64,000 bases of DNA from IMGVR_UViG_3300024252_000004:186001-250000, one strand, 5' to 3'; positions 26,115-55,486 are shown, counted from the first letter of the stretch. Notes: generated by a model not told the origin, from the letters alone. Numbers and translations are program-made.

Positions 26115-26399
26115 ATGTACGACGGTACTGATAAGCGTAGCCATAAACAGTATGGGCACCCAACCCTTGATGAGTCAAAGATTTTCAAGTGGTTTGGTTT
26201 TGATAATCCTCATTTTCCAGACTTCTACCTTTACAGTAACTCTACTGGAACAGTAGGCATTTGGATGCATGATGGTTCTCCGATAATTGAAGGTTCCGCT
26301 AAGTGTCTTGGTTCAATCTACACTCGTCTTGCGCCAATTGAGCGAATTCTTTTTATGGAAGAGTATGATGCTATGGCCGCATTGTTTGGAGTCAGCTAA
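26115..26399 (+). CDS. hypothetical protein (CxG...L..EE family)
   Basis: GAGG RBS; C-terminal motif shared with 26399, 43779, 47406. Confidence 0.6.
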   Translation: MYDGTDKRSHKQYGHPTLDESKIFKWFGFDNPHFPDFYLYSNSTGTVGIWMHDGSPIIEGSAKCLGSIYTRLAPIERILFMEEYDAMAALFGVS

Positions 26400-26710: not shown

Positions 26711-26719
26711 GAGGTCCAA

Positions 26720-28600
26720 ATGACCAATACAAATACAGAAAGAGTTGAGTCTCTCGGTCCAGCCGAGACGATCATCAGTGCTCTTATCAAAGCTACAGAC
26801 CACATGGTCCACAACCGTCCCGGCATTGTTGTTTCAGACAATAGCAACGTTGTGGGCACAAAGTGGTATCCTGTTACTCACAAGAGTGAGGAAGGACAGG
26901 ATGTTGTCTACAGGCTTGATAAGGTTGGGGCCAAGAGTGTCCGCACCAGAATTGGTATTCGTGGTGAAGATGGTATCGTCCGTAGCAACGGTCGTGTCGT
27001 CGGTGAGTACCGTAAGCCTGGAATCTACAAGGAAGTTGCATCTTTCCTTTACAGGCAGGTCGCTAATGTTTGGGACATGGACAATGAGTTTGTAGCTCGT
27101 TGGGCATCTTGGTCTATGAATCAGGAGTACCGTGATCTCAAGGTTGTTCTTGCTGCATTCTCTATGGTTCAGAACCGTATGGGTGCCCCAATCAGAGAGG
27201 GTGGAGAAATCCTATTCTATGATGATGATTACCGTGATGTTGGTGAGGCCATGTGTCTCGTCAGGAGTAAGGGTAAAGACATTGATGCTAAGCTGCTGAT
27301 CCGTATTGGTGATGTTCTCCGTCAGGATGATATCGCTGCAATGAATCGTGAGCTTGGTTTCGGTATCTCTACTCGTAGACCTGCGATGGGAAGGTACAAT
27401 AAGGTTGTTGAGAAGTGGCTGCGTTACCGCGAGAATAACCCTCGTATGCTCGCCGGCCTTATCAAGTCTGGTCAGAGGAAGATGATCATGACTCTCGCTA
27501 AGAGAGTCGGATACAAGCCTCAGACTGAGGATTTCTTCAAGGTTCTTAGGTGGAAGCAGAAGCAGTCAGAAGATGGTCGCCGTACTATGATGATTGGTGT
27601 GGAGGTTTCCGAGGCAGAGTCTTGGGTGAACCTTACTGAGCGTCAGATTTGCGAGAAGATTATGTCTGACAAGCCGAACTTCAAGCGGATCACTGGTCTG
27701 CTTGGGACGACTACAGTTGGGCTTACTCGTGCGATTATGGCTGCGGCTATTGATGGCGGGTGTCTATCTGATGCTGACCTAATCATTCTCACTCCTACTC
27801 TTGAAGAGCTTGGACTCTTGAAGGTTGCGGCTATTAAGCAGAGGTGGGAGACTGCCACACTTAATGCTACAAACCAGAGAGCAATGAACATTGCTCGTAA
27901 TGTCAAGAGCAGAGAGACTGCTGATGTCTTGAAGGCTGGTGCTGACGCTGCTGTTCAGAAGGCAGTGGAGGAGAAGGTTGCTAACCTTCGTCTCTATGTC
28001 ATTGTCGATAAGTCTGCATCTATGGATGGAGCAATCGAGAAGGCGAAGCAGTATCTTTCCATGTTCATTCATGGCTTCCCACTGGATAAGATCCATGTTT
28101 CTATCTTCAACACTGTAGGTAGAGAGCTTAGGATTAGAAACAGGTCGAGTGCCGGAGTTACTCAGGCATTCATGGGTCACAGTGCGAGCGGTGGAACTAA
28201 CTATGCTGCCGGTGTTTCTGCGCTGGCGAATAGAAAGCCTGCTGCTGACGAAGATGCTATCATGCTTTTCGTTGGAGATCAGGACCCTCATGCATCTGGT
28301 GGTGTCCGTAGTAACTTCGCAAGTGTTGTCAGAGCTTCTGGCATTAACCCCGTCTCCTTCGCTCTCATTGAGGTAGGCAGAAGGCAGGGGCGCTGTGTCG
28401 ATACAACGGCTACTGCTCTTGGCATTCCATGTGTCAGGATTCAGGAGGACACTTTTCAGGATCCTTACGCAGTTCAGAGAGTGTTTACTCACTTGATTGA
28501 GTCTGCGCCTATCGGAGCTTCTAGTGCGAGAGCACCAAGGAAGACTTTGATTGATACGATCTTGGAGACAGAGCTTCTTGCTAAGCCGGCTTGGGCGTAA
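26720..28600 (+). CDS. vWA-domain protein with large basic helical N-terminal region; Ro60/TROVE-like candidate
   Basis: MIDAS VIVDKSASM, GGTNY, LFVGD in the C-terminal third (vWA is secure); TROVE assignment inferred from architecture and flanking tRNA-like RNAs. Confidence 0.7.
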   Translation: MTNTNTERVESLGPAETIISALIKATDHMVHNRPGIVVSDNSNVVGTKWYPVTHKSEEGQDVVYRLDKVGAKSVRTRIGIRGEDGIVRSNGRVVGEYRKPGIYKEVASFLYRQVANVWDMDNEFVARWASWSMNQEYRDLKVVLAAFSMVQNRMGAPIREGGEILFYDDDYRDVGEAMCLVRSKGKDIDAKLLIRIGDVLRQDDIAAMNRELGFGISTRRPAMGRYNKVVEKWLRYRENNPRMLAGLIKSGQRKMIMTLAKRVGYKPQTEDFFKVLRWKQKQSEDGRRTMMIGVEVSEAESWVNLTERQICEKIMSDKPNFKRITGLLGTTTVGLTRAIMAAAIDGGCLSDADLIILTPTLEELGLLKVAAIKQRWETATLNATNQRAMNIARNVKSRETADVLKAGADAAVQKAVEEKVANLRLYVIVDKSASMDGAIEKAKQYLSMFIHGFPLDKIHVSIFNTVGRELRIRNRSSAGVTQAFMGHSASGGTNYAAGVSALANRKPAADEDAIMLFVGDQDPHASGGVRSNFASVVRASGINPVSFALIEVGRRQGRCVDTTATALGIPCVRIQEDTFQDPYAVQRVFTHLIESAPIGASSARAPRKTLIDTILETELLAKPAWA

Positions 28601-28607
28601 AAATTTA

Positions 28608-37391: not shown

Positions 37392-37886
37392 ATGGGTAAA
37401 GATATCGAGCATTTCTATGCCAAGTATGGTGTGTCACAGGTAAGAGATCAGAGTTACATAGATGAGTTCAAAGAACTGCTGGAAGCAGTCTTCGCTGCCG
37501 AAGAGAAGATTCAGTTGATTGTGTTCAGAGGATACACTCCATCATTCAATGATGGTGACCCGTGCCGACATAGTTCTGGCATCTCCGTACTAACGACTGA
37601 TGGTCTGGAAGATGATGATGAGATCGTTTGGCCTGACGTGGAGGAGCACTACGATGATACGATAGAAGATGCCGTATTGCTTGACGAAGTGTTTGGAGTG
37701 AGGCTTGCTACGCCAGTCTCTTCTCACATTTTTGATTCAACAACAGCCATTAGCAAAAAGGTTGATAGAGTAATCTATGGCAATGATTTGGCGGATATAA
37801 TCTACGACACTAACTATCTTGTGAAGGTATATCGCACAGCGAATGGCATCACAATTGAGCATAAGGAGTATCACTGTGGCTGGTAA
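37392..37886 (+). CDS. hypothetical protein (GYTPSFNDGDPC family)
   Basis: tandem paralog of the next gene. Confidence 0.7.
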   Translation: MGKDIEHFYAKYGVSQVRDQSYIDEFKELLEAVFAAEEKIQLIVFRGYTPSFNDGDPCRHSSGISVLTTDGLEDDDEIVWPDVEEHYDDTIEDAVLLDEVFGVRLATPVSSHIFDSTTAISKKVDRVIYGNDLADIIYDTNYLVKVYRTANGITIEHKEYHCGW

Positions 37887-38397
37887 ATTTGACGAACTAT
37901 ATGACAAGTATGTGAAAAGCGAAGTTGTGAAGGAGCAGTTTAAGGCTGATCTTGACGAGCTATTGCTCGCGACCTTTGAGGCTTACCCTACCCTTCGGAT
38001 GATAATCTTTCAGGGTATGACCCCTGCTTGGCAGGATGGAGAAAGGTGTGAACATAGCGAGGAGATTATGCTCGTATGTGATGATGGCCTCTATGATAGC
38101 GGCTTTGCTTCGGATTACAGTTTCGATTCTAATGAGTTTACCGATAAGTACGGAGACAAGGCCGAGAGTATGATCGGGAAAGTTCTTAAGTTTCCTGGAG
38201 CAGAAACTGTCTATGTAGAACTTCCAGTTAATGTTGGACCACACCCTAAGAAGCTACCCAAAATGGAAAAGGTGAAACAAATCCTTAAGGCTCAACTTCT
38301 TACTACTTTGATCCATGACACTGATTATGTCTTAGCGATTACAAGAACAGAAGAAGGATACGACTCTAACGTTCAGGAATGCTGGGATGAATACTAA
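37843..38397 (+). CDS. hypothetical protein (GMTPAWQDGERC family; likely GTG start near 37876)
   Basis: tandem paralog. Confidence 0.7.
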   Translation: MASQLSIRSITVAGKFDELYDKYVKSEVVKEQFKADLDELLLATFEAYPTLRMIIFQGMTPAWQDGERCEHSEEIMLVCDDGLYDSGFASDYSFDSNEFTDKYGDKAESMIGKVLKFPGAETVYVELPVNVGPHPKKLPKMEKVKQILKAQLLTTLIHDTDYVLAITRTEEGYDSNVQECWDEY

Positions 38398-39375: not shown

Positions 39376-39744
39376 ATGGAGCTTGGAACAAATGTTCAGA
39401 ATGAACTTGGTGCAATCCAGTCACTGAATGCCAAAAATCAACTGACGATAGATAATCTTCGTGAGCTTTGGTCTCAAGTCTTCAGACTCAATTTGGGCAA
39501 AAATTCTAATATGACGTTCAGTCCGGAAGGTTGGAATCATATCACCATTCGTTTCTACAACTTCGGAATGGTCGTAAGTGCCAGAAAGGAACCAAAAAGA
39601 TGGAGCGCCGATTGGTTCTGTGGAGCCAGCGGAGAAACGTGTGGCTTCTATGTGAGAGAGGAATCCACTTTCGAAAAGCAGTATGGTTCGTTTGAAGATT
39701 GCACAGAAGTAATGGAACTCGTTCTACAGTTTCTACAAGAATAA
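39376..39744 (+). CDS. hypothetical protein
   Basis: AAGGA RBS. Confidence 0.55.
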   Translation: MELGTNVQNELGAIQSLNAKNQLTIDNLRELWSQVFRLNLGKNSNMTFSPEGWNHITIRFYNFGMVVSARKEPKRWSADWFCGASGETCGFYVREESTFEKQYGSFEDCTEVMELVLQFLQE

Positions 39745-39757
39745 AGTAGGTTAAGAT

Positions 39758-42037
39758 ATGTCTGACGCACTAGTTAATGCTCTCCTTGATAACTCAAAGG
39801 CTGGCAACCCACGGCACTATGCCGCTGTCATTAGAGCTACGGAATCTGAAGAGGTTGCCGTTCTAAAGGCTCAGCTTGACAATCTCAAAGAGCAGATGGA
39901 GAATGCCGCAGCTTCCAGTGAAATCTTTGGAAGCATTCGCAATGCCATTCTTGGCACTGGATATGCTCGCCGCAGAAAGGCGACGAAGGATGACCTGTTC
40001 GGCAGTCTTTCTGCTGCTCCTATGGCTGGAGCTAACACAACTATCATCGATATTGTGACCTATCAGACTGCATTCATTGGTTCGTTCTCTCGTATGATCT
40101 ATGAGGGTGCCGAACTTGTTTGCAATTCGAATATCATTTCCTTTGATCAGGCTAAGACTGATCTATCGGAACAGCTTGGAGAAGACTCTAAGGTGATCGG
40201 TAAGAGTAGGGCTGATGCTATCCTTGCTAAGCTGGGGAACGCAGAGAAGGATGCGCTACAGTCTCTTGCACTGGAGCAGCAGGTAAATGCCAGCGCAGTT
40301 ACTAACTTTATGACAGGAGTTAGAAGGCTTGGTCAGGCTCTAATGATGGGTGAGGACTACTGCGCAAACATGCTTAACAGCTTTGATGGTTACTACAACC
40401 GTCTTCGTCATCGTCACACCGAGGAAGGCATTGTCGTGCAGCCTTGGCATGGAATCCCATGTCCCGTCCTCACAGACGTGGCTATCAATGTCTGGGATAA
40501 TTTGGACCGTGCCGGAGAGATTGAAGGCGGAGCTTCTACTCGTGAAGAGATTGGAGTTTATACCGTTAGGCGAGCTAAGGCTATGATTGAAGCCTGTCAT
40601 TCTCTGAGGGTTATGTTTGCCAACGCTAATGACTTCTTTGCGATGGAGCTTGAAGATATCAGAGCTACTACCACTGCCCTGCGGTCTACTGTTGTAGCAC
40701 TTGATACGATTCTTGGCAACAGTGTCTGGAAGTATTCGCCTTACAAGTTCGATGCATACGCCAAAGAGCTTTCCGATGCTTATATCGACATGAATCTGCT
40801 CGACATCCCTCCCGAGGGAAGGACTAAGGAAGCACTGGATAAGTCTGAGACTTTCGCGCTTAAGCATAGGAATGATTGTATTGCAGATATTGCAGCAATG
40901 ATTGCCTCCGAGCGTCCCGTTGATGAGATTGTTGAGGTTGCACTAGAACTGAAGCTCGAAGAGAAGGCATTCCTTCTTGAAGAGAATAGTTTCTTTGTGT
41001 GCAAGATCGGAACGGGGAACTCCTTCCTTGGTGAAGCTCCCGGTGCTATCGAAGTGATGCCGGGAGAGAAGCCTACCGCAAACCTTGACAGGATTTGGGG
41101 CTCTGGCTTTGACGAAATGCGTCATTACATCGCAGGTCTTCATACTATCAAGAAGTGGGCTCCGCTATATCTCGCAACAAGTCCAAGCTTCAGTACGGAC
41201 AAGAGCAACGTTCTTCTTGTTGGACCACAGGGTTGTGGTAAGACTGAGCTTCTGAGGGCAGTTGGTGCAGACAATGGATCCATTTCCATCTTTGCTACTG
41301 GCTCTGACTTTCTGACCTGTTGGATGGGTGAGGCTCAGAAGAACCCAAAGCGTCTCTTCAATGAGGCACGAAAGCTTCAGAAGGCTTCTGGTCGTGATGT
41401 CAATATCCTTATTGATGAGATTGATCAGGTGCTTAAGAAGGGAGATGGAAGCTCCGGTAAGGTTGACCTGTCTCTTGAGTTCCAGAACCTAATGGATGGT
41501 GTGGTTGCATACCCTGGCATTAGAATCTGGGGAGCTACTAACTTCCCCGACCTGATTCCTACTCCTATGCTTCGACGCTTTGCTCGTGTTGAGATTGTCG
41601 GAGAAATGGATCAGGAAGATAGAGAGCAGACTCTCAGATACTACATCGGCAACTTTCTTCCCACTACTGAGGATTGTGAGGATAAGTACGAAGGTTGGGC
41701 CAGAGGTCTTGAAGGTGCGACTGGAGACATTCTTCGCAAGGTTGCAGACGATGTTTGGCGCGGAACCGTTCGCTCTCTGATTGATGTGAATGAGGATCTT
41801 GCAGAAGAGATTGTCACGTACCTTGTCGATACCTACGGAGAACGCTTCTCCGCTCAGGATCTTTCTGACGAGGATAGAGAACTTATCAAGGAAATGATGG
41901 GCGAGCACAAGGTAGGTCCCCTTGTCGTACAGTCCTGTATCACTAAGCTACTTGGCAATCAGGCAATCAAGGATCAGATTGCCGGTGCCAGCAATACTTA
42001 CGCTCTCGCCAGACAGATGAAGCGTAAGAGTCAGTAA
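39758..42037 (+). CDS. classical-clade AAA+ ATPase with long N-terminal helical region
   Basis: GPQGCGKT, pore loop WMGE, ILIDEID, GATN, RRF. Confidence 0.9.
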   Translation: MSDALVNALLDNSKAGNPRHYAAVIRATESEEVAVLKAQLDNLKEQMENAAASSEIFGSIRNAILGTGYARRRKATKDDLFGSLSAAPMAGANTTIIDIVTYQTAFIGSFSRMIYEGAELVCNSNIISFDQAKTDLSEQLGEDSKVIGKSRADAILAKLGNAEKDALQSLALEQQVNASAVTNFMTGVRRLGQALMMGEDYCANMLNSFDGYYNRLRHRHTEEGIVVQPWHGIPCPVLTDVAINVWDNLDRAGEIEGGASTREEIGVYTVRRAKAMIEACHSLRVMFANANDFFAMELEDIRATTTALRSTVVALDTILGNSVWKYSPYKFDAYAKELSDAYIDMNLLDIPPEGRTKEALDKSETFALKHRNDCIADIAAMIASERPVDEIVEVALELKLEEKAFLLEENSFFVCKIGTGNSFLGEAPGAIEVMPGEKPTANLDRIWGSGFDEMRHYIAGLHTIKKWAPLYLATSPSFSTDKSNVLLVGPQGCGKTELLRAVGADNGSISIFATGSDFLTCWMGEAQKNPKRLFNEARKLQKASGRDVNILIDEIDQVLKKGDGSSGKVDLSLEFQNLMDGVVAYPGIRIWGATNFPDLIPTPMLRRFARVEIVGEMDQEDREQTLRYYIGNFLPTTEDCEDKYEGWARGLEGATGDILRKVADDVWRGTVRSLIDVNEDLAEEIVTYLVDTYGERFSAQDLSDEDRELIKEMMGEHKVGPLVVQSCITKLLGNQAIKDQIAGASNTYALARQMKRKSQ

Positions 42038-42050
42038 AAGAGAGGCAATC

Positions 42051-43550
42051 ATGAATGAGCTAAGAACTTCTGCCGAGAACATCGGTGTGTATCGAGGATT
42101 CTATAATCGGCAGTACAATGGGGGCGGAAGGCTTGTAACTAGCGGCGCAGGATATACTGACCGTGAGAATGACGATGCGGTCATTAAGCTGATCACTGGC
42201 AACAAAAAGGCTGGTCCATTCGGAGAACTGTATCTGGAAAACCGAGCAAAGGTTATTCGCTATGGCGATACCTTTACGGTTCACACCCCTGGATTCTACA
42301 TCTATCGCAACATGCGCAAGAGAACTAAGGGAAAGTTTAACGTAATCCTCTTTACTCGGGTAGGTACATTCGACTCTTGGTCGATTTACGATAAGCTCGA
42401 TCGCTACGGTGATTCGTTTGCTGAGTTTGGAATCTTCGGAGAAAATGAACTATTTTCCGGTGAGGAATTCGAGAGATCCACACTTAAGTGTTGCATCCCT
42501 TACGGTGGTTATGGCACTCCGACGAGCCCGGTCCTCCTAGTTGCTGACATATACGGTCAGACGCTATACACTCAGTTGATGAGTAAGATTCTCGGAACGG
42601 AAAATGTCGAAGAGGCAGCCGAAGAGGTTGTCGATGAGATCAGGGTTGAGTCTGAGTATGCCTTGTTTAATGGGTACATTCCCGTCTTTGCTTCGAACAA
42701 TTCAGTTATCACTGTTAAAAGCGATGGCACAGTTGAGGACTTCAAGTTTCCTTACTCTCCAGATGCAGATCCGTCTAGTGTTGCAGGGAACATTAAGGAT
42801 GGCACAGCCTATTGGGGACGCAGAAGTATCATGAGGCACTGGAATTCCGATTATGATGACTATTCTCCTGCCGAGTTTATCTTCTACGATGAGTTCAAGA
42901 ATGAGATTGTTTGGTGCGATCAGGCACAGGAAGAGTTCGCTGCATTCTGTGATACAAACCAGAAGGTGATGAAGGCTTCCTTTGATGAAAGAACCGACAG
43001 ACTGCATGATGATCCGCTGAGGGATCTGTTTGTCGGATACCTTGAGGCGATGAGTCCTATTGCGTTTAAGGAGTACATGAATGATTACTTCAAGAAAAAG
43101 GGACTCCCTAATCTGGAAGTAACGGAAGTGTGGCCAGCCATGTGCTGCGGTGGAAAAACCGTACACGATTGGGACACAGGCCATAGTGAGTTTATGACCT
43201 CAAAGGATATGGGGTATTACATTGAGGTTGCTTATAACGGTAAGAAAATCATTGGTGGGAACTCCGGAACCTCTTTCTCCTGGCTTGCCGTAAAGCATCA
43301 GAGGGAGAAGGATAGGGTCAGACTGATTCACTCCAGTCGTTGTCAGCACATCTCTTCGTGGTCCAAGCATACAACTGATCAGGGTTACGCTCACTGGGAG
43401 ATTTCGGACTGGATTACTGGTCCGATGGCTGAAGAGTCCCGGCTTAAGATCGGAGATTGCCCTGCTGTCTTCATGGGTCGTGACTCTACTGGTAAGTCCA
43501 GAAAGAAGCTTGCGATGGAGACTCTGAGGGCAAGGATGGCGAATCTCTGA
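42051..43550 (+). CDS. hypothetical protein, paralog of 51599-53020, conserved C-terminal Cys
   Basis: YIPVF, TEVWP, RCQHISSWSK, DWITGP shared with the paralog. Confidence 0.8.
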   Translation: MNELRTSAENIGVYRGFYNRQYNGGGRLVTSGAGYTDRENDDAVIKLITGNKKAGPFGELYLENRAKVIRYGDTFTVHTPGFYIYRNMRKRTKGKFNVILFTRVGTFDSWSIYDKLDRYGDSFAEFGIFGENELFSGEEFERSTLKCCIPYGGYGTPTSPVLLVADIYGQTLYTQLMSKILGTENVEEAAEEVVDEIRVESEYALFNGYIPVFASNNSVITVKSDGTVEDFKFPYSPDADPSSVAGNIKDGTAYWGRRSIMRHWNSDYDDYSPAEFIFYDEFKNEIVWCDQAQEEFAAFCDTNQKVMKASFDERTDRLHDDPLRDLFVGYLEAMSPIAFKEYMNDYFKKKGLPNLEVTEVWPAMCCGGKTVHDWDTGHSEFMTSKDMGYYIEVAYNGKKIIGGNSGTSFSWLAVKHQREKDRVRLIHSSRCQHISSWSKHTTDQGYAHWEISDWITGPMAEESRLKIGDCPAVFMGRDSTGKSRKKLAMETLRARMANL

Positions 43551-43753
43551 TGACTAAGATCATTCTGCGATTTCCGAACGTTTCCAAAGAGGACCTGAAA
43601 AAGAAACTTGATCCTGCGGTTGAGAACTTCAATCTCTCCGCAGAGTATCAGGACGAAGAGGTTGCTATTGTTGGGCCGGAAAGAGCTATCAATGCTATCC
43701 AGCAGGCTTATCTAACTCAGAAGCTGATGAGTGATCTGGGAGTAAGGTTCTGA
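43550..43753 (+). CDS. hypothetical protein
   Basis: TGATG coupling. Confidence 0.6.
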   Translation: MTKIILRFPNVSKEDLKKKLDPAVENFNLSAEYQDEEVAIVGPERAINAIQQAYLTQKLMSDLGVRF

Positions 43754-44837: not shown

Positions 44838-45506
44838 GTGAATGTGCCAAAAAAGAAATTCAGTTGTAAAAACTGTAATACGGTCACAGAAAGATATAGG
44901 AGCACGGTAAGAAATCCAGACAAAGTCTTTTGTTCTAAAGAATGTAAAGGCTCTTGGCAAAAAGGTAAGACTACCGGAAAGGATAATCCAAACTATCGCG
45001 GCGGACTACACTGCGAACAATCCTACTGCAAGTGTGGTTCTGAGAAAGACTATAGAAGTGAGCAGTGCATGAACTGTCGTTCTATCGTTTTCAATATGGA
45101 TCAAATCCTGTTGGCAATAGCGAATAGTAAGAGCTACAGTGAAGCTTCAGTCAATCTTGGAATGTCGCGAACATACCTAACGAAATATATCAAAGAGCAC
45201 AAATTAGATATAGCACACTTTAGGCCGGGAAGAAATAGGGAGATTCCTAACGAAGAGTTATTCTCAAAATCTTTTTCGAGAAGAAATAACACGGTTAAAA
45301 AAAGAATAACTAGAGATAAACTGCTTGTCAATTCCTGTTTGTGGTGTGGAATTACAGACACTTGGAATGACAAGCCTATAACATTAGAACTTGATCACAT
45401 CAATGGTGATCCTACTGATAATCGTATTGACAATTTGCGTTTACTGTGTCCTAATTGCCACAGCCAAACTCCCACGTCGAAAGGTAAAAACAGTAGAAAA
45501 AAATAG
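44838..45506 (+). CDS. free-standing HNH endonuclease
   Basis: LELDHINGDPTDNRIDNLRLLCPNCHSQT; AT-rich. Confidence 0.9.
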   Translation: MNVPKKKFSCKNCNTVTERYRSTVRNPDKVFCSKECKGSWQKGKTTGKDNPNYRGGLHCEQSYCKCGSEKDYRSEQCMNCRSIVFNMDQILLAIANSKSYSEASVNLGMSRTYLTKYIKEHKLDIAHFRPGRNREIPNEELFSKSFSRRNNTVKKRITRDKLLVNSCLWCGITDTWNDKPITLELDHINGDPTDNRIDNLRLLCPNCHSQTPTSKGKNSRKK

Positions 45507-45517: not shown

Positions 45518-46167
45518 ATGTCAGGTCAGAAGACTTTTTTCACTTCTGACCTCCATTAGCTGGAGGTCACTTTTTTCATCACAATATAATTAAATATTCT
45601 AACAGACCTTATCGTGATTCGCATGGCGAGCCTGATGTGAATGCAATGAATGAGGGAATTGTTAATAACTGGAATGAAGTAGTTGGTCCTAAAGACCGAG
45701 TATTTATCCTGGGCGATGTAGCAATGGGCGGAATGTCTAAAGCTCCTTACCTCGCAGAATACCTGCGTCGTCTTAACGGTGACAAATATTTGGTTCCTGG
45801 CAACCATGATACTTACATTCTCAATAGCGAAGAATGTATGGAAGAGCTAACCTTGCTTCCTGCCGTTTACGAACTGAAGATTCCAGATGACACTCTTCCT
45901 AAGCGAAAGAATGGTCGTATGAAGCGTCAGACGATTGTTCTGTGTCACTACTCTATGAGAGTATGGCACAAAAATGGCAAGGGTGCTTGGCATCTATTCG
46001 GCCACAGTCATGGCAGCATGGATGGCATCGGACTATCTTTCGATGTTGGTTTCGACGGACCATACTCTAATCATCGCCCTATGAGTTATGAGCAGGTTCG
46101 CGACGTTATGAGTAACCGAGAAATGGCTCTACTTGATCATCACGGCGAACATACAAGCTACCATTAA
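45518..46167 (+). CDS. metallophosphoesterase interrupted by a 14-nt insertion (45557-45570); candidate translational bypass
   Basis: AGGAGG-ATG, MSGQKTFFTSDLH then TAG; resumes FFHHNIIKY...LGDV, GNHD, HY, GHSH in another frame. Confidence 0.8.
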
Positions 46168-46177
46168 GAGGTGTTCT

Positions 46178-47395
46178 ATGCAGTTCGAGGACTTCTGTAA
46201 AGCTCTCAACGAAAGCAAGTGGCGAGGCTGGATTCACGAAGTTGGATTCGGCCTCCCTTTGCAGGCTTCTTATCTCGATGTTCCTGGGGCTTCCGCTACC
46301 ATTATCAGTACAGGCTGTCTGTATGATAAAAGTGTGCAGGGTCTTGGGAGTATTCGTTCTGTAAGCAGAGAAGGCGCCACAAGGTTTGCTGCTGGCTTCA
46401 TGGAAGGTCAGTTGGGCAAGCTCCCTGAGTCTTATGAGGACCTGTTCAGCATCGCTGTGAGTGGGGCACACAAGACTGCTGAGAAGCGTGGTGATAGTCA
46501 TGCCTGGATCTCTCTCATTACTGTCTCCACCGGATTTGAGCTTGATGGAGAAGAATGGAATGTGCATGTAACCTTCGATAAGGATGAGTTCGAAGACAGA
46601 AAGGTTGCCGGTCAAGTGCTGGCACAAATCTGTCAAGACCTTATGTGTTCGGTCTTTAAGCTTGACGTTTGGACAGTCGATAGGTTCATCCGAAAGTATC
46701 GTGATGCTTCCGGCTTCTCTGTCGATGTTGTCAGTAATCATTTCCCTGGAAATTGCCTGACTCTTGAGCAGCAAATCTCTTTGGCAGGAACAGGTAAGCC
46801 TGTCTTCATCAGAGAAGGTAAGCTTGTTCGTCCGACTGACATTCTGAGAGAGAAGACCACAATCTACAGGGGTTCATTCAATCCTCCGACCAAATCTCAC
46901 GATGCTATTGGTGGCGATGCCATCTATGAAATCGTCATCTATAATGCTCGAAAGGGTATGGCCGACTTGGGAGACGTAGCACACAGAGTTAGAATGCTCA
47001 ACGCTATGGGCAAGACAGTTATGATCACCTACTCTGAGGCATTGTTTTCAGAGATTGATTTTGTCTTGAGAAGGATTGTTGACGCAAACTATAGTTATAT
47101 TGTTGGAGTTGATACTTTCAATGCAGTTGTAGACCCGAAGTGGTATGACTATTACCCTTACGAACTTGAAACTTTCAAGAACGGTAGTCGCTTTATCGTA
47201 GCTGGAAGAGACGATGCTCCGATCAAGAAAACTGTCATTGCGGAGTACATTCAATACGAAAGGCTAACCGGTGTTGAGTATGATCACGCCATTAGTTCTT
47301 CGAGAGTTAGAGGTGGAGAGAGCAATCTCTGTCCCGAATCAGTTCAGAAATACATTGCTGATAACAAGTTGATAAACTATCCCGCAAAGTCTTAG
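46178..47395 (+). CDS. NadD-like nucleotidyltransferase with CinA-like N-terminal region
   Basis: YRGSFNPPTKSH, VGVDT, ISSSRVR; N-terminal PGAS...Y...SVS pattern. Confidence 0.7.
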   Translation: MQFEDFCKALNESKWRGWIHEVGFGLPLQASYLDVPGASATIISTGCLYDKSVQGLGSIRSVSREGATRFAAGFMEGQLGKLPESYEDLFSIAVSGAHKTAEKRGDSHAWISLITVSTGFELDGEEWNVHVTFDKDEFEDRKVAGQVLAQICQDLMCSVFKLDVWTVDRFIRKYRDASGFSVDVVSNHFPGNCLTLEQQISLAGTGKPVFIREGKLVRPTDILREKTTIYRGSFNPPTKSHDAIGGDAIYEIVIYNARKGMADLGDVAHRVRMLNAMGKTVMITYSEALFSEIDFVLRRIVDANYSYIVGVDTFNAVVDPKWYDYYPYELETFKNGSRFIVAGRDDAPIKKTVIAEYIQYERLTGVEYDHAISSSRVRGGESNLCPESVQKYIADNKLINYPAKS

Positions 47396-48321: not shown

Positions 48322-49011
48322 TTAATAAGATTTGCCATCTTTATATCTTTCGCGCCTCTTATATCTTCCCATGCCTTTGTTCTTACCTTTATAAGTATCA
48401 GTCTGAGCATGACAATTTGGACAGATTAATCTAAGATTCGATAAAGAATTGTTTTCTGAGTTACCATCGATGTGATCTAATTCAATCGGCATTGGTAACT
48501 CATTCCATTCTAACAAATCGCACACAGAACATTTGCTTCCGTTGTGTTTTAAAAGATATCTTTTTCCAACTACCGCAGAAAACTTTCCAGATGCTATTCT
48601 TTTCTCAAGATCAAAATCATGCTGGCAATAGTTTGAGCAATACTTTGCAGAACCTCTCTTGGTTTTTTTGCCGCAATTTACACAATCTGATGCGGGTTTA
48701 CCATTTCTGGTGACGCCTACATTGTGAAATGAAGCAGAGCAGCTATGAGAACAAAATTTGGAATTAGCTTTAGCGTAGTTGGTGAATGAATTGCTGCAAC
48801 CTAAACAAATATATTCTACGAGAACTTCATTAAATAAACTCCTGCATTGACCTGAACAAAATGAATGCGTAAGATTTTTTCGAATGGAACGCAAAACTGA
48901 ATGCTTATTTATGCGATAAGCTTCATCGCATTGATCACACTCAAGAGTTACAATTTCTCTTGATTTGAAGTCTGATAACCACTCTCTGATGTTATCATCT
49001 GAATATTTCAT
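48322..49011 (-). CDS. free-standing HNH endonuclease with multiple Zn fingers
   Basis: IELDHIDGNSENNSLSNLRLICPNCHAQT; AT-rich; inverted, next to a tRNA. Confidence 0.9.
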   Translation of the reverse strand: MKYSDDNIREWLSDFKSREIVTLECDQCDEAYRINKHSVLRSIRKNLTHSFCSGQCRSLFNEVLVEYICLGCSNSFTNYAKANSKFCSHSCSASFHNVGVTRNGKPASDCVNCGKKTKRGSAKYCSNYCQHDFDLEKRIASGKFSAVVGKRYLLKHNGSKCSVCDLLEWNELPMPIELDHIDGNSENNSLSNLRLICPNCHAQTDTYKGKNKGMGRYKRRERYKDGKSY

Positions 49012-50980: not shown

Positions 50981-51448
50981 ATGTCTGCTGAATTCGATCT
51001 TCGTCCCGATGACCTCGTCATCATTCGTCTTACCCTTCGCGGTCGCGATGGCGGTGCTGCCGTCAACGTGAATGAGACCCCTACTGTTGCTGATCTCGGC
51101 CTCGGTCAGGATGCTCCTACCGTCGAGCCCCCAACGCTCGATACTGCCGAGTACGCTCGCCTGCTTTCTGCTGGCGGAAGTGATGCTGAGGCTGCCCTTC
51201 GTATGCTCGCTGAGTTTAACGAGGCAACCGCTGACTTCATGGCTGCTGGTGGAACCCCTCCTGCTGAGTCTCTGGCTCAGGCAGTGGTTGACTGGGTCGT
51301 TGAGACCCGTCCTGGCGGACACAAGTTCGTTACCACTGACTCCGCAGACGGCTACGTGATCTCCGCTCGTGAGATCAACATCCACCAGGTTAGCCTTGGT
51401 GATGATGACCGTGCCTTCCGTGTCACCGCTGTCGGTACTTGGGGCTGA
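50981..51448 (+). CDS. second Ubl-like candidate ending VGTWG
   Basis: terminal aromatic-Gly; N- and C-terminal strand patterns echo the 34061 Ubl; very biased codons; E1 two genes downstream. Confidence 0.5.
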   Translation: MSAEFDLRPDDLVIIRLTLRGRDGGAAVNVNETPTVADLGLGQDAPTVEPPTLDTAEYARLLSAGGSDAEAALRMLAEFNEATADFMAAGGTPPAESLAQAVVDWVVETRPGGHKFVTTDSADGYVISAREINIHQVSLGDDDRAFRVTAVGTWG

Positions 51449-51598: not shown

Positions 51599-53020
51599 GT
51601 GATTAGAATGTCCGATATTGGTAAGCTTTGGTCCACGGTAGACGTAGACCTTGAAAAGTATAAGGCCGGCACAATGCCGGAGGTTCGCAGGAGCGGCAGT
51701 TACAGTAACTGCAATTGTTCCGAGTGCCAGAGTCTTAAGGCTCTGCGTGACAATATTCTCGCCGCACGAAACGGAAGTACATTCTTCGGCATCTCCCGAG
51801 ATGTGCAGGCAAAGGTCGAAAAGGTCAAGATGTCTCTGGTCGTAGAGACTCCAGGCTTCTATAGTCTTGGCCCTATCTCGGATCAGACGAATGGTATCTT
51901 CGATACGGTCTACTTCTCCGAGCCCGGAAAGTATTCTTTCGTCAAGATTTACAAGGCCGCACGCAATGCTCCAGATGGTCTGATGCTCATTGACGATGAG
52001 ATCAGCGCTGCCTTTGGAGAGGGTGGAATTACGTCTGCTTACAGAGAGGCTTTCGGAAAGGTCTTTGTTATGGGAGAGCTTGCCGGCGATGCTTGGGGCG
52101 CTCTGAAGAATAAGATCAATCTCGCTATCCAGGGTGTTGTGCCTGAGGAAGATGAGCCTATTCTCGAAGAGGTTAACTTCGATGGAGTGTTTCTGGTCAA
52201 TGACCGATACATCCCGATGTTCTACTTCAATGACACCTTCACTATCATCACGAGTGCCGATGGTAATAGTAAGAAGTGTGAGTCCATCCCTGGTCTTCCC
52301 ACTGATGATGCGACTAAGTCGATGAACTACATCAAGAGCATCGCCAAGAAGCTTCCTAAGTGCTTCGGCTTTGCTGATGATAAGCACGCGATCCCATTCG
52401 TCTATGATACCGAGACGCATTCTCTTGCGACTGGTGTTGGGATCTCTGATGTCATTCATTGCCTTGTGAATGAGAATAAGGATAAGTTCTCTGAGGCCAT
52501 TCAGAATGTCTTTGGTCACGTTCTGAGTCCGCTTGAGTTTATTGATGCAGTGAAGCAGGACTTCGCAGTCAATGGTGCAGATGAGTTTGAGATCACCGAG
52601 TTCTGGCCTAAGCATGTTACGGCACGCTGGTCGGAGTGGGAGACTCACGATAAGCTGGACCACTCTGTTACCTTCTCTGGCTATCTTGCAGGAGTTAGTT
52701 TCCAGGGTAAGCCTCTGGTTGGGAAGAATGGTTCTCAGCGTGGAGACATCCACATTCGTTTCAACCCTGAGACTGGCCGTCCTTGGCTTATGAAGTCTCC
52801 CTGGTGTCAGCGAATCAACTCTTGGTCTAAGAAGAATCATGGAGTTATCGATCAGCTTTATGATATCTGGGCTCTCGCTGACTGGCTGTCCGGTCCCTTC
52901 GCTGAAAAGTGCAACCTCAACATGAAGTCTGCTCCTTGTGTCTTTGCTGGAAACAAGATGGTTGACCGAAAGAAGAGTGCTCTTGACAAGCTTCGTGCCA
53001 AGCTTAACGCTGTAGGCTGA
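51599..53020 (+). CDS. hypothetical protein, paralog of 42051-43550, conserved Cys (possible E2-like)
   Basis: YIPMF, TEFWP, WCQRINSWSK, DWLSGP. Confidence 0.8.
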   Translation: MIRMSDIGKLWSTVDVDLEKYKAGTMPEVRRSGSYSNCNCSECQSLKALRDNILAARNGSTFFGISRDVQAKVEKVKMSLVVETPGFYSLGPISDQTNGIFDTVYFSEPGKYSFVKIYKAARNAPDGLMLIDDEISAAFGEGGITSAYREAFGKVFVMGELAGDAWGALKNKINLAIQGVVPEEDEPILEEVNFDGVFLVNDRYIPMFYFNDTFTIITSADGNSKKCESIPGLPTDDATKSMNYIKSIAKKLPKCFGFADDKHAIPFVYDTETHSLATGVGISDVIHCLVNENKDKFSEAIQNVFGHVLSPLEFIDAVKQDFAVNGADEFEITEFWPKHVTARWSEWETHDKLDHSVTFSGYLAGVSFQGKPLVGKNGSQRGDIHIRFNPETGRPWLMKSPWCQRINSWSKKNHGVIDQLYDIWALADWLSGPFAEKCNLNMKSAPCVFAGNKMVDRKKSALDKLRAKLNAVG

Positions 53021-53066: not shown

Positions 53067-53858
53067 ATGCTACGTAGACCCACTATTGCCATCGTTGGCT
53101 GTGGCTTTATCGGCTCGCATCTTGCAGACGAGCTTGCTAAGCTTTTCTACTCTCAGGATGTATTCCCTTTCCACTTCCTCTTCATTGACTATGATGAATG
53201 GGAGGACCGGAACGCTGCGAACCAGAATGTGTCTTACGAGATCGCAAATAGTGAAGAGCCTAAGGCTATCACTTGCGCTCGGTATGCCAATCAGTACCCG
53301 AACAACGAGGGCAAAGCTGTCGTTGAGAAGCTGACTCATGCAAATGCTGCTGAGCTTCTAAAGGATGCTGTGCTTGTCATTGATGCAGTGGATAACATTC
53401 CTACTCGTCAGATCCTTTGGGCTATGGGTATTGGTGGAGCTACTGCTCCCTGTATGCATGTTGGTATCTCGCGGAAGGGTGACGGTATCATCAACTGGTC
53501 TTCGACCAAGCTTGATACCTTCCCTTTCAACCCGGTTGCAATGGCCGGTCGTGATCTCGCTGAGCAGGATGTCAAGGAGCCGCCTTGTGAAATGTATAAG
53601 TATCGTGCCTCTGGCATGGTTCTTTTCCAGGCAGCAGCTAAGGCTGTATCCTTCTTCTTCGGAAAGGATCCTTGGAATTATCTTGAGTGTGATGGGGTCA
53701 CTGAGCGTGGAACCATGACTTGCTGGACTACCAGTGTTGAGAACGGAGCGAAGCTTCTGACAGATGATATGTATCTGGATATGGAAGAGGGCTTTTTCCC
53801 TGTTGATTGGCGGGACGTTGACTTCCACGCTATCAACGCAGAAACGGACGAGGACTAA
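53067..53858 (+). CDS. second ThiF/E1-like activating enzyme
   Basis: VGCGFIGS, DYDEWEDRNAANQ, VIDAVDN, PPCE. Confidence 0.88.
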   Translation: MLRRPTIAIVGCGFIGSHLADELAKLFYSQDVFPFHFLFIDYDEWEDRNAANQNVSYEIANSEEPKAITCARYANQYPNNEGKAVVEKLTHANAAELLKDAVLVIDAVDNIPTRQILWAMGIGGATAPCMHVGISRKGDGIINWSSTKLDTFPFNPVAMAGRDLAEQDVKEPPCEMYKYRASGMVLFQAAAKAVSFFFGKDPWNYLECDGVTERGTMTCWTTSVENGAKLLTDDMYLDMEEGFFPVDWRDVDFHAINAETDED

Positions 53859-53860: not shown

Positions 53861-55486
53861 ATGACTAATCGTAATTGGGGCAGGTCGAGTACGCCCACAA
53901 AGAAGACTGCTCACGCAAAGATCACGATCTACAGTGGCGAGATTCCAGAGGATGATAATACTGATGATTCCACTTGGGAGGTCGAGGGTGAGTATTACGT
54001 CGGAGAGCAGAGGCTCGGACAGGCTATTGACAATGCTGTTGATGTCCTTCAGGTCTACTCCGATGTAATCAAGGATGACAACAAGTCGTACAAGATGCCT
54101 ACTGGTAAGGACACTATTCCTAACCTCTTCATGAAGAAGGGAAGTGTTCCTACTAAGAGGACTTGGACCCGAAATGTTGCTTGCTGTGCATACAATGCAA
54201 CTGACGGCTACATGAAGCACTGGCTTGGTCGCCAGTTTGATCGGGATGATAGGGATTGGTACTGTCGCCACCATTTGGTGACCCCTGATGGTCTCCCTCA
54301 GGAGTTCAGTTTCACTGTGCTTCAGCAGCTTGTTGAGGCTTATGACTGTGGTATCAAGGGGATTCAGGTTCCACGAACCAGTCGTCGCTTTGATGAGCAG
54401 AAAATCTTCATTGAGGCTCTCGGCGCAAACCCTCTCTTTAAGGTGAATGGAAACACCACCAACGAAGAGGCTTATGAGGTTCTTTATCCCGAGGCAGCTA
54501 TTCCTATCTTCCTTGAGAAGGAAGGTCTGGATGATACTCCGAAGGGTCGTGCCGAGCTTAAGAAGCGTGTCTTTGACACTTGGCGATTCGAGTGTATTGA
54601 TATGCCCGATCTCGGTGCAGTCATCATGCGGCAGTTTTCTTTGAGCATGGTAGGACACAATGGTGGTTCTAACTACTATGGTCCTCGCTCTAAGTTCTCG
54701 GTGAATGATGATACTGATAAGTGGCTGATGGCTGTGCAGTTTGCAGAGCTTAAGGACATCGACTATCTTGTTCCGCTGGAGCTTGAGGCATACAAGGAGT
54801 ATGACGGTACTCTGATCTATGATTGGTGGGGAATCAAGTGCGATGCTTCTAAGACTCTTAGAGGTTACGCTCCCAAGTATCAGAGCACCAGTTCTTACCG
54901 AAGCGGCTATGGCGGCGGCAGCAGCTACAACGGTGATACTTCCGGCTCTGGCAAGGGAAAGACTGATTACTTTGTTCCTCCACTTCGGGCTCTTGGATAC
55001 GATGCTTCACAGATTCTTCTGATGTCTTGGAAGACTGCTCGGACCCTAAAGGAAGGTAAGATTTCTGCGAAGGGTACGGTCATTAAGAGTGATGGTACTT
55101 GGCTGTCTGAGAAGGATAAGAGTTCTTCCTCTAAGGATGGAGGACAGATGAAGCTTATCACGGACAAGGAGAATGTTTCGACAGAGGTGAAAGTCCTCGC
55201 TTACCCGCCTCTGTGTGAGGGTTGTCAAAAGAATCCAGGCGATACGGTCTATGATATCAATGATAACCTAAAGTGTGAGAACTGTGGTGATCTTGTCGAG
55301 GCGTACCTCGTTCCCAGGAACAACCTTCTGAGCGGCTGGACTGCTGTTAGCGAGCGAGCACTGTCTCAGCTTGATGACGACAGTGATGACGACCTTGAGG
55401 ATTGGGAATACCAGTGGCTTCTTGGGGGCGATGACACCGATGAGATAGATTTCAGTGGAGACTCTGGGAACATTCACCTTCCTTGA
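53861..55486 (+). CDS. hypothetical protein (541 aa) with Gly/Ser/Tyr linker, C-terminal Zn ribbon and acidic tail
   Basis: CEGC...CENCG; follows E1. Confidence 0.8.
   Translation: MTNRNWGRSSTPTKKTAHAKITIYSGEIPEDDNTDDSTWEVEGEYYVGEQRLGQAIDNAVDVLQVYSDVIKDDNKSYKMPTGKDTIPNLFMKKGSVPTKRTWTRNVACCAYNATDGYMKHWLGRQFDRDDRDWYCRHHLVTPDGLPQEFSFTVLQQLVEAYDCGIKGIQVPRTSRRFDEQKIFIEALGANPLFKVNGNTTNEEAYEVLYPEAAIPIFLEKEGLDDTPKGRAELKKRVFDTWRFECIDMPDLGAVIMRQFSLSMVGHNGGSNYYGPRSKFSVNDDTDKWLMAVQFAELKDIDYLVPLELEAYKEYDGTLIYDWWGIKCDASKTLRGYAPKYQSTSSYRSGYGGGSSYNGDTSGSGKGKTDYFVPPLRALGYDASQILLMSWKTARTLKEGKISAKGTVIKSDGTWLSEKDKSSSSKDGGQMKLITDKENVSTEVKVLAYPPLCEGCQKNPGDTVYDINDNLKCENCGDLVEAYLVPRNNLLSGWTAVSERALSQLDDDSDDDLEDWEYQWLLGGDDTDEIDFSGDSGNIHLP

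What the first reader, a model, noticed from the sequence alone, without database searches (positions are those of the whole stretch)
39758..43753. Classical AAA+ ATPase next to a paralog of the cassette-2 Cys protein
Seen: 42051 and 51599 align over their C-terminal halves (YIPVF/YIPMF, TEVWP/TEFWP, RCQHISSWSK/WCQRINSWSK, DWITGP/DWLSGP, PAVF/PCVF). One sits beside E1 and the Ubl candidate, the other beside a 759-aa AAA+ with an aromatic pore loop. Established: classical AAA+ unfoldases (Cdc48, ARC/Mpa) process tagged proteins. Inference: the pair may be a divergent E2 or Cys-E3 family, and the ATPase an extractor of tagged substrates.
Basis: partly seen in the sequence, partly recalled or inferred. 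Interest (0 to 1): 0.62.

Follow-up and report, generated by a model that had tools for sequence, protein, structure and literature searches.

The report
Phage AAA ATPase beside orphan Cys-protein paralog
In a 395-kb jumbo phage, a protein of an unknown family with one never-changing cysteine has a true paralog next to a ubiquitin-activating-type enzyme, but the neighbouring AAA ATPase is only an occasional neighbour, not a fixed part of that tagging system.

Summary
P0002 (42051-43550) and P0003 (51599-53020) are real paralogs (BLASTP E 7e-30 over about 445 residues). P0001 (39758-42037) is a classical AAA ATPase with an intact aromatic pore loop.

The family has only 49 representatives among 1.84 billion proteins. 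Every context I read lies on a large phage-like contig. One Cys is invariant in 41 of 41 members.

The P0003-type copy always sits in a four-gene cassette: a 155-aa protein ending in ...RVTAVGTWG, the Cys protein, a ThiF/E1-type adenylyltransferase, and a 440-570-aa Cys/His protein. An E2-like role is therefore plausible by context.

Membership of the E2 family is not supported. No HMM matches, and no UBC-type structure appears among the fold-search matches (best Z 4.4-4.8, at noise level).

AAA and P0002-type genes are gained and lost independently: both in 3 loci, P0002-type only in 3, AAA only in 1. Three more distant AAA homologs have no Ubl genes within 10 kb. A 99%-complete 332-kb relative has the cassette but neither gene. 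The phage encodes no ClpP or proteasome.

The result is a new orphan partner family of phage E1/Ubl-like cassettes, whose mechanism is still inferred.

The parts
39376..39744 (+). orf122, a small ORF directly upstream of the AAA gene
   Evidence: Its stop lies 13 nt before the AAA ATG. A homolog was found upstream of the AAA only in L004 (E 1e-25). It has no Pfam hit.
39758..42037 (+). P0001, a 759-aa classical-clade AAA ATPase. It has a family-specific N-terminal region of about 470 aa and a single AAA module (residues about 471-759).
   Evidence: PF00004, 66.7 bits. The best solved relatives match over the AAA module only: Cdc48, p97, NSF, AFG2 and a Vps4-like protein. The best NCBIfam hit is CdvC, E 3.9e-21, far below its cut-off. 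A search specific to the N-domain finds 15 proteins of 738-804 aa, plus one of 1182 aa that carries an intein.
41222..41245 (+). Walker A motif GPQGCGKT (residues 489-496)
   Evidence: G489, P490, G492, C493, G494 and K495 are invariant in 14 family members.
41321..41329 (+). Pore-loop 1, W-M-G (residues 522-524), within TCWMGEAQKNPKRLF
   Evidence: W522 is nearly invariant (Y in one member). G524 and E525 are invariant.
41414..41425 (+). Walker B motif DEID (residues 553-556)
   Evidence: I552, D553, E554, I555 and D556 are invariant.
41573..41578 (+). Arginine pair R606-R607 (RRF) in the second region of homology. Sensor-1 N595 lies upstream of it.
   Evidence: R606, R607, F608 and N595 are invariant.
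42051..43550 (+). P0002, a 499-aa member of an orphan three-domain family. It belongs to the copy type that is not linked to ThiF ('clade A').
   Evidence: Paralog of P0003, E 7e-30. The family has 49 representatives among 1.84e9 proteins. The AlphaFold model has pLDDT 80.7. There is no Pfam, PHROG, NCBIfam or PADLOC hit. A ribosome-binding-site-like AGAGAGG lies 7 nt before the ATG.
43008..43547 (+). The conserved C-terminal domain of P0002 (residues 320-499). Predicted order: two helices, a beta-meander, the Cys loop, then helices.
   Evidence: Alignment A3. Domain model pLDDT 82.1, pTM 0.74. All invariant residues of the family lie in this domain.
43341..43343 (+). Codon of C431, the only invariant cysteine, within S-x-[RW]-C-Q-[HR]-x-S-x-W-S
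   Evidence: Invariant in 41 of 41 members and in 45 of 45 C-domain sequences. It lies 3 residues after a beta-strand, at the start of a loop with pLDDT about 53-65.
43550..43753 (+). orf67, a 67-aa ORF translationally coupled to P0002 (TGATG overlap)
   Evidence: Sequence. Homologs occur in L004 (after the P0002-type gene) and in L006 (between the AAA and the P0002-type gene). It was found only where the AAA and the P0002-type gene are both present.
50981..51448 (+). Ubl2, a 155-aa candidate carrier or modifier protein ending in ...FRVTAVGTWG
   Evidence: R-V-T-A-V-[GA]-T-W-G is invariant at the C-terminus in 7 homologs. Three of them carry short tails after the Gly (VCA, VCL, R). It always lies directly upstream of the P0003-type gene. 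Its fold was not determined.
51599..53020 (+). P0003, the ThiF-linked paralog ('clade B'). The invariant Cys is C403 (nt 52805-52807). A CxCxxC motif lies at residues 38-43. The real start is probably the ATG at 51608.
   Evidence: M4 aligns with M1 of the homologs.
53067..53858 (+). ThiF263, an E1-type adenylyltransferase
   Evidence: PF00899, 47.4 bits. GxGxxGS, DxDxxExxN..Q, K66 and DxxDNxxxR are invariant. Only the E1 half of the CBASS Cap2 models matches. A Cys in EPPCEMYKYR is conserved within this subgroup.
53861..55486 (+). P13, a 541-aa fourth gene of the cassette. C109, H266 and a C-terminal CxxC...CxxC ribbon are invariant.
   Evidence: Alignment A10. Present after ThiF263 in L008, L009, L012, L014 and L018. 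No Pfam or PDB hit.
33665..36552 (+). Cassette 1, for context: JAB (33665-34042), Ubl1 (34061-34345, ending RPKTPFG+V), orf77, P10 (34590-35969) and ThiF190 (35980-36552)
   Evidence: Prok-JAB, 30.1 bits. ThiF, 78.7 bits. The Ubl1 C-terminus is FG followed by V, I or nothing. P10 is unrelated to P0002 (hhalign probability 0.3%).

Best explanation
The interval 39376-43753 is one co-transcribed run: orf122, AAA, P0002, orf67.

P0002 is a diverged duplicate of a jumbo-phage-specific protein family. The founding arrangement of that family is a four-gene cassette:
- a 155-aa protein whose conserved C-terminus ends in Gly;
- the Cys protein;
- a ThiF/E1-type adenylyltransferase;
- a 440-570-aa Cys/His/zinc-ribbon protein.

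The most likely mechanism is as follows. The E1-type enzyme adenylates the C-terminal Gly of the small protein. This step is inferred from the intact adenylation motifs and the conserved Gly end. The activated carboxylate then passes to the invariant Cys, which sits on a flexible loop of the C-terminal domain of the P0003/P0002 family. That would be an E2-like role carried out on a fold that is not recognisably UBC; it is inferred from context alone. P0002 keeps every invariant residue, so it probably performs the same chemistry in trans with a different target or carrier.

The AAA ATPase is a competent substrate-threading motor of the classical clade, nearest to Vps4/CdvC and Cdc48. It belongs to its own jumbo-phage family. 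It comes and goes independently of both the cassette and P0002. Its link to the tagging system is therefore at most a lineage-specific add-on, not a built-in extractor.
For: Shown:
- Paralogy, E 7e-30.
- The family is small: 49 representatives among 1.84e9 proteins. Pattern scans found no relative in 185,579 species genomes.
- C431, Q432, W437, D443, W449, W454, P458 and G476 are invariant in 41 members of both copy types.
- The order Ubl2, P0003-type, ThiF263 (then P13 where the contig continues) is conserved in L004, L006, L008, L009, L011, L012, L014 and L018, down to about 25% identity of the Cys protein.
- The ThiF adenylation motifs are intact.
- The Ubl2 C-terminal Gly is invariant, and 3 of 7 homologs carry removable tails after it.
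- The genome has no conventional E2, so that role is vacant.
- The AAA motifs are intact and conserved.
- The gene junctions are tight or overlapping, and terminator-like sites are no more frequent than in shuffled sequence.
- AAA and the P0002-type gene occur independently. Both are present in the window, L004 and L006. Only the P0002-type gene is present in L008, L012 and L013. Only the AAA is present in L018. Neither is present in the 99%-complete G001, which still has the cassette.
Against: - No sequence or fold similarity to any E2, E3, or other thioester- or persulfide-forming enzyme.
- The family has no invariant His or Asn beside the Cys.
- P13 also has an invariant Cys, so it could be the real transfer enzyme, leaving P0003 with another role.
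- The beta-grasp fold of Ubl2 was not shown.
- P0002 itself has no adjacent E1 or Ubl.
- The AAA, P0002 and orf67 genes are translationally close, and the trio is kept in three diverged phages (AAA 45-76% identical) with the gene order rearranged. That argues for some functional tie in this lineage.
- For L015-L017 only +-10 kb could be examined.
Confidence: 0.5

Rival explanations
1. P0002 and P0003 are E2- or E3-type enzymes, and the AAA ATPase unfolds or extracts the proteins they tag, as Cdc48 does with ubiquitin and Mpa does with Pup.
For: The AAA and P0002 genes are adjacent and probably co-transcribed. The trio AAA, P0002-type gene and orf67 is kept in the window, L004 and L006 despite 45-76% AAA identity and a change in gene order. 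The AAA has an intact aromatic pore loop and is nearest to Cdc48, CdvC, PAN and Mpa.
Against: The AAA is absent from three syntenic loci that keep the P0002-type gene. It is present in L018 without that gene. Three distant AAA homologs have no Ubl-type gene within 10 kb. G001 (99% complete) has the cassette without the AAA. The phage encodes no ClpP or proteasome. The AAA C-terminus (...MKRKSQ) has no HbYX-type tail, and no Ubl-binding domain was recognised.
Confidence: 0.12
2. A sulfur relay rather than protein tagging. ThiF263 adenylates Ubl2, which becomes a thiocarboxylate (as with ThiS, MoaD, CysO and TtuB). The invariant Cys of the P0003/P0002 family carries a persulfide, or uses the thiocarboxylate to thiolate a nucleotide, tRNA or cofactor.
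For: Both ThiF proteins score best against the ThiF and MoeB models. Each carrier ends in a single Gly. Cassette 1 combines JAB, Ubl and ThiF, as the CysO/Mec and QbsE/QbsD systems do (established knowledge). The phage lineage invests in tRNA and translation genes.
Against: The genome has no rhodanese. The only PP-loop protein near the region is TilS, above its cut-off, and TilS is not a thiolase. No cysteine desulfurase or known sulfur-insertion enzyme lies in the cassette. Ubl2 at 155 aa is much larger than known sulfur carriers.
Confidence: 0.15
3. P0002 and P0003 are not enzymes. They are targets, scaffolds or specificity adaptors of the cassette, and the invariant Cys is structural or is itself the attachment site. 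P13 (invariant Cys and His plus a zinc ribbon) is the catalytic partner.
For: P13 has an invariant Cys109, His266 and four ribbon cysteines, and it is as tightly linked to ThiF263 as P0003 is. The P0002 family has no recognisable catalytic fold and no invariant His.
Against: The invariant residues form a dense cluster around one loop (C, Q, W, D, W, W, P). That pattern is typical of an active or binding site rather than a structural Cys. The duplicate persists without an adjacent cassette.
Confidence: 0.15
4. AAA, P0002 and orf67 form a self-contained module with no link to the Ubl cassettes. For example, P0002 and orf67 could be adaptors or substrates of the ATPase, with P0002 having taken on a new function after duplication.
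For: orf67 was found only where the AAA and the P0002-type gene are both present (3 of 3 such loci, none of the others). The stop and start codons overlap.
Against: P0002 keeps every invariant residue of the ThiF-linked copies, which argues for retained chemistry. P0002-type genes exist without the AAA in three loci.
Confidence: 0.08

Closest known systems
Bacterial E1-E2-Ubl-JAB systems: Bil (BilABCD), CBASS Cap2/Cap3 and Bub (PMC11601596; PMC10097602)
   Same: All have a ThiF/E1-type adenylyltransferase next to a small protein whose C-terminal Gly is sometimes followed by a removable tail. A JAB peptidase lies in the same region (cassette 1). A partner protein carries a conserved nucleophile. 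The ThiF proteins here match the E1 half of the Cap2 models.
   Different: The partner is a 450-530-aa three-domain protein with no UBC-fold or E2 HMM match. The system is phage-encoded in every context read, and pattern scans found no relative in 185,579 prokaryote species genomes. Ubl2 is 155 aa and its fold is unknown. A fourth Cys/His/zinc-ribbon protein (P13) is present.
Canonical UBC/E2 enzymes and the Pfam families Prok-E2_A to Prok-E2_D
   Same: One invariant Cys lies on a loop that follows a beta-meander and precedes helices. The gene lies next to an E1-type gene.
   Different: There is no HPN motif and no HMM hit. No UBC row appears among the 50 best fold matches (Z >= 2.8). RWD-type rows score only Z 2.8-4.0, which is at noise level.
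Cdc48/p97, PAN, Mpa/ARC and Vps4/CdvC, the classical AAA unfoldases
   Same: The AAA module is shared: Walker A and B, an aromatic pore-loop 1 (WMG, as in Vps4's KWMGES by my recollection), sensor 1 and an RRF arginine pair.
   Different: The protein has a single AAA module, not the D1+D2 pair. Its 470-aa N-region has no detectable relative outside 15 jumbo-phage proteins. All NCBIfam scores are far below their cut-offs. It has no HbYX tail and the phage has no proteasome or ClpP. It has no consistent genomic link to Ubl genes.
ThiS/MoaD-ThiF/MoeB and CysO-MoeZ-Mec sulfur-carrier systems
   Same: The ThiF core scores best against the ThiF and MoeB models. The carriers end in Gly. JAB trimming is plausible in cassette 1.
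   Different: No rhodanese, desulfurase or sulfur-insertion enzyme was found. The carriers are larger. The partner proteins are unknown families.

Membership tests
Classical AAA ATPase (PF00004) | HMM score above the curated cut-off | tested here: met
   66.7 bits against a cut-off of 21.2, residues 485-613.
Classical AAA ATPase (PF00004) | Walker A, Walker B, aromatic pore-loop 1, sensor-1 Asn and arginine fingers in the second region of homology | tested here: met
   GPQGCGKT, IDEID, W522-x-G524, N595 and R606/R607 are invariant or nearly invariant in 14 homologs.
Cdc48/p97 | Two tandem AAA modules (D1 and D2) with an N-terminal double-psi-barrel domain; equivalog-level score | tested here: not met
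   Only one AAA stretch is present. TIGR01243 scores 61 bits against a cut-off of 803. The N-region has no recognised domain.
Proteasomal ATPases (PAN, Mpa/ARC) | Coiled-coil plus OB N-domains, a C-terminal proteasome-docking tail, and a partner proteasome | tested here: not met
   The pup_AAA and PAN models score 47-53 bits against cut-offs of 500-750. The C-terminus is ...ARQMKRKSQ. The genome has no PF00227 or PF00574 match.
UBC/E2 (UQ_con, Prok-E2_A to Prok-E2_D) | HMM match | tested here: not met
   P0002 and P0003 have no Pfam family at E <= 0.1. No match in the whole genome at E <= 1. They do not match the E2 half of the Cap2 models.
UBC/E2 (UQ_con, Prok-E2_A to Prok-E2_D) | UBC fold | tested here: not met
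   The domain model (pLDDT 82) was aligned against 48,161 PDB representatives. The best Z is 4.4 (a GAR domain), and none of the 50 best rows is an E2. Foldseek finds nothing at E <= 1e-3. A weak or cryptic relationship cannot be excluded.
UBC/E2 (UQ_con, Prok-E2_A to Prok-E2_D) | Conserved catalytic Cys | tested here: met
   C431 is invariant in 41 of 41 and 45 of 45 sequences. Thioester formation itself was not tested.
UBC/E2 (UQ_con, Prok-E2_A to Prok-E2_D) | Surface exposure of the Cys | not testable with these tools
The Cys starts a loop with pLDDT about 53-65.
UBC/E2 (UQ_con, Prok-E2_A to Prok-E2_D) | Genomic linkage to E1 and Ubl genes | tested here: inconclusive
   Met for the P0003-type copy in 8 of 8 loci besides the window. 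Not met for P0002 itself: its nearest ThiF genes are 5.5 kb upstream and 9.5 kb downstream.
ThiF/E1 adenylyltransferase (the neighbours P0011 and P0012) | HMM score above the cut-off, plus the nucleotide-binding and Mg/Arg-finger motifs | tested here: met
   PF00899 scores 78.7 and 47.4 bits against a cut-off of 28.1. The motifs are invariant.
Ubiquitin-like modifier or carrier (Ubl2, Ubl1) | Conserved C-terminal Gly, with or without a removable tail | tested here: met
   Ubl2 ends ...TWG followed by nothing, VCA, VCL or R. Ubl1 ends ...PFG followed by nothing, V or I.
Ubiquitin-like modifier or carrier (Ubl2, Ubl1) | Beta-grasp fold | not tested
Ubl2 has no Pfam, NCBIfam or PDB sequence hit.

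The most novel reading that the evidence does not exclude
The P0002/P0003 family is a structurally new class of Ubl-transfer (E2-like) enzymes that jumbo phages use to tag host or phage proteins. Together with the 155-aa Gly-ended protein, a minimal E1 and P13, it would form a previously undescribed virus-encoded conjugation pathway. In one sublineage a duplicated transfer enzyme would have been coupled to a dedicated AAA motor and a 67-aa adaptor that act on the tagged proteins.
Probability: 0.2. Interest if true: 0.8.

Novelty: new variant of a known kind. Interest (0 to 1): 0.5.

Why it matters
Ubiquitin-like conjugation in prokaryotes has so far been described as a bacterial anti-phage weapon (Bil, CBASS Cap2, Bub). 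Here a lineage of 330-400-kb phages carries two E1/Ubl-type cassettes of its own.

The best-conserved partner in those cassettes is an orphan family with one invariant Cys and no known fold. If that Cys forms a thioester, it would be an E2-like function on a new scaffold, and it would be used by the virus. The system is directly testable with three or four recombinant proteins.

The negative result also matters. The attractive 'Cdc48-like extractor' story rests on an adjacency that is not conserved. It should not be propagated into annotation.

Tried and rejected
- Complex prediction on ThiF263 + Ubl2 + P0003 returned 'no answer' (score 0.00, below the mark). It is not evidence either way.
- Sequence searches of the PDB with family profiles gave nothing for the P0002 family, P10 or P13, and only chance-level rows for Ubl2.
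- Fold searches of the full-length and C-domain models gave no match above noise. The libraries were PDB by Foldseek, PDB by VIA-align wide, ESM Atlas and BFVD. The Atlas's own models of P0002 and P0001 are poor (pLDDT 0.34 and 0.55), so their neighbours mean nothing.
- The phage record collection has no DNA or protein match to P0002, and only generic AAA-domain matches to P0001.
- Scans of IMG/VR, JGI metagenomes and GTDB genomes added only one further locus (L009/L019) and the window's own contig. The first metagenome call failed because no conserved pattern was available.
- The word search with the C-domain profile found only fragments.
- P10 of cassette 1 is not a distant relative of the P0002 family (hhalign probability 0.3%).
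- The sulfur-relay idea gained no support. There is no rhodanese, and the PP-loop protein at 21159-21800 is TilS.
- The careful maximum-likelihood tree did not finish, so only the quick tree was used. Its midpoint root is unreliable: P0043 falls on the P0002 side, yet it is flanked by Ubl2 and ThiF.
- The whole records behind L015-L017 could not be searched.
- Literature searches found no description of this cassette or of this AAA family.

Full report
**Setting.** The window is bases 186001-250000 of a 395,127-bp IMG/VR virus record that CheckV rates as complete. Almost all genes lie on the + strand, and six tRNA genes are scattered through the window. No phage record in the collection resembles the region at the DNA level. 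This is an uncultivated jumbo phage. Its closest relatives are metagenomic contigs of 332 kb and 406 kb.

**Observation.** P0002 (42051-43550) and P0003 (51599-53020) are true paralogs. BLASTP gives E 7e-30 and 25% identity over about 445 residues, which is nearly the full length. They are the only two copies in the genome. P0003 is followed by a ThiF-family gene and preceded by a 155-aa ORF that ends in Gly. P0002 follows a 759-aa protein with one PF00004 domain. The junctions are tight. A gap of 13 nt containing AGAGAGG separates the AAA gene from P0002. The P0002 stop overlaps the start of a 67-aa ORF (TGATG). Terminator-like sites are no more frequent than in shuffled sequence.

**The Cys-protein family.** Pfam, PHROGs, NCBIfam and PADLOC give no hit for either paralog.
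- An exhaustive profile search of 1.84 billion representative proteins found 49 members. They are almost all 410-530 aa, and none is fused to another domain.
- Pattern scans of 185,579 prokaryote species genomes found no relative.
- In 41 full-length members the only invariant cysteine is C431 (P0002 numbering). It sits in S-x-[RW]-C-Q-[HR]-x-S-x-W-S and is followed by invariant W437, D443, W449, W454, P458 and G476.
- No His is invariant.
- A CxCxxC motif near the N-terminus occurs in 13 of the 41 members, all outside the P0002-type clade. P0003 has it and P0002 does not.

**Fold.** AlphaFold2 gives confident models: the full-length protein at pLDDT 80.7 and the C-domain (residues 320-499) at pLDDT 82.1 and pTM 0.74. 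The C-domain reads as two helices, a five-stranded beta-meander, the Cys loop (low confidence), a helix and a terminal helix.

No library returns a convincing match.
- Foldseek against the PDB finds nothing at E <= 1e-3.
- VIA-align against 48,161 PDB representatives peaks at Z 4.4-4.8, on GAR domains. The tool's own guidance places that in the noise.
- The ESM Atlas gives TM <= 0.37, and BFVD gives nothing.
- A few RWD-type rows appear at Z 2.8-4.1 (Ctf19-Mcm21, the FANCL ELF domain, Spc24/25). No UBC enzyme appears.

The order 'helix, meander, Cys loop, helices' recalls E2 enzymes only loosely. I do not count it as evidence.

**Context of the ThiF-linked copy.** I read eleven related loci and scored them by tblastn. 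The run Ubl2, P0003-type protein, ThiF263 recurs in L004, L006, L008, L009, L011, L012, L014 and L018. It is followed by P13 wherever the contig continues. It persists even where the Cys protein is only about 25% identical.
- Ubl2 ends in invariant R-V-T-A-V-[GA]-T-W-G. In three of seven homologs a short tail follows the Gly: VCA, VCL or R.
- ThiF263 keeps the nucleotide-binding, Arg/Asn and DxxDN motifs. It matches only the E1 half of the CBASS Cap2 models.
- The genome has no recognisable E2.

This cassette is therefore a real system that activates the C-terminus of a carrier protein, and the Cys protein is its most constant partner. That supports an E2-like role by context. P13 also carries an invariant Cys, an invariant His and a zinc ribbon, so which of the two proteins is catalytic remains open.

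A second cassette lies upstream at 33665-36552. It encodes JAB, Ubl1 (ending in PFG plus V, I or nothing), orf77, P10 and ThiF190. P10 is unrelated to P0002.

**The ATPase.** P0001 is a classical-clade AAA protein. Its best solved relatives are Cdc48/p97, NSF, AFG2 and a Vps4-like protein, all matching over the AAA module only. Its best NCBIfam model is CdvC. All models score far below their cut-offs. Walker A, pore-loop TC[WY]xGEA, Walker B, sensor-1 N595 and the R606/R607 pair are conserved in 14 homologs. It is therefore probably an active threading motor.

Its 470-aa N-region defines a family of 15 proteins, all on large phage-like contigs. One of them carries a LAGLIDADG intein directly after the Walker-A lysine.

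The distribution argues against a built-in link to tagging:

| Loci | AAA | P0002-type gene | orf67 | Cassette |
|---|---|---|---|---|
| window, L004, L006 | present | present | present | present |
| L008 and L013 (same syntenic slot), L012 | absent | present | absent | present in L008 and L012; none found on the stretch of L013 read |
| L018 (same slot) | present | absent | absent | present |
| L015, L016, L017 (AAA 31-36% identical in the N-region) | present | none within +-10 kb | none within +-10 kb | no ThiF, Ubl or Cys-protein gene within +-10 kb |
| G001 (332 kb, 99% complete) | absent | absent | not searched | present |

The phage encodes no ClpP or proteasome. What remains is the conserved trio in one sublineage, whose gene order differs in L006.

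**Rivals.** A sulfur-carrier reading gains nothing. The genome has no rhodanese, and the nearby PP-loop protein is TilS. A non-catalytic role for P0002 and P0003, with P13 as the enzyme, cannot be excluded. The complex prediction gave no answer and is not used.

**Verdict.** Membership of the E2 or E3 families is not shown, and the ATPase-as-extractor idea is not supported. The cassette and its orphan Cys partner look like a new, virus-encoded variant of prokaryotic Ubl machinery, and I found no description of it in the literature.

Noticed in passing
window 45637-47395: orf420 (46133-47395) has a C-terminal half resembling NMN/NaMN adenylyltransferase (TIGR00482, E 2.3e-7, below the cut-off; motifs GSFNPPTKSH and ISSSRVR). 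It follows a metallophosphatase-like ORF (45637-46167). The pair is conserved in the same syntenic block in L004, L008, L013 and L018. It may be a phage NAD-salvage or counter-defence function.
   Followed up: partly
window 53861-55486 (P13): The fourth gene of cassette 2 has an invariant Cys109 (RxVACCAYNAT), His266 (GHNGG), TTNEEA and a C-terminal CxxC...CxxC ribbon, with no Pfam or PDB hit. It is a second candidate catalytic Cys protein (peptidase or ligase) of the cassette.
   Followed up: partly
window 33665-36552: Cassette 1 comprises a Prok-JAB peptidase, a 94-aa protein ending in RPKTPFG+V (the homologs end in FG+I or FG), orf77, the 459-aa P10 (invariant Cys8, no known family) and a 190-aa minimal ThiF. 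The variable single residue after the Gly suggests trimming by the JAB peptidase.
   Followed up: partly
L017 10001-13549 (P0067): One homolog of the AAA ATPase is interrupted by a LAGLIDADG intein directly after the Walker-A lysine.
   Followed up: no
window 14689-15441, 20767-21800 and the tRNA genes at 6536, 7869, 25265, 28615, 49025 and 61514: tRNA-related genes: TilS above its curated cut-off (21159-21800), a cytidine/dCMP-type deaminase (20767-21162) and a PolyA_pol/CCA-adding head domain (14689-15441). There are also six tRNA calls, two with odd anticodons (Asn 'att', and one called with a two-base anticodon).
   Followed up: no
window 37392-38397: orf164 and orf184 are overlapping tandem paralogs that share a DG[DE]xC[RE]HS motif. 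They are conserved upstream of the AAA/P0002 slot in L004, L008, L013 and L018.
   Followed up: no
window 44838-45506 (+) and 48322-49011 (-): Two HNH endonuclease genes lie inside the syntenic block between the two cassettes. They are probably mobile insertions.
   Followed up: no
window 51599-51610: The GTG start listed for P0003 is probably wrong. Met4 (ATG at 51608) aligns with Met1 of all homologs.
   Followed up: partly
window 23132-33437 and 56979-58166: A cluster of RNA and DNA repair and signalling genes lies around the cassettes: a radical SAM protein, a VWA protein, a PP2C phosphatase, a 2H phosphoesterase, an ATP-dependent DNA ligase and an RlaP-type nucleotidyltransferase.
   Followed up: no
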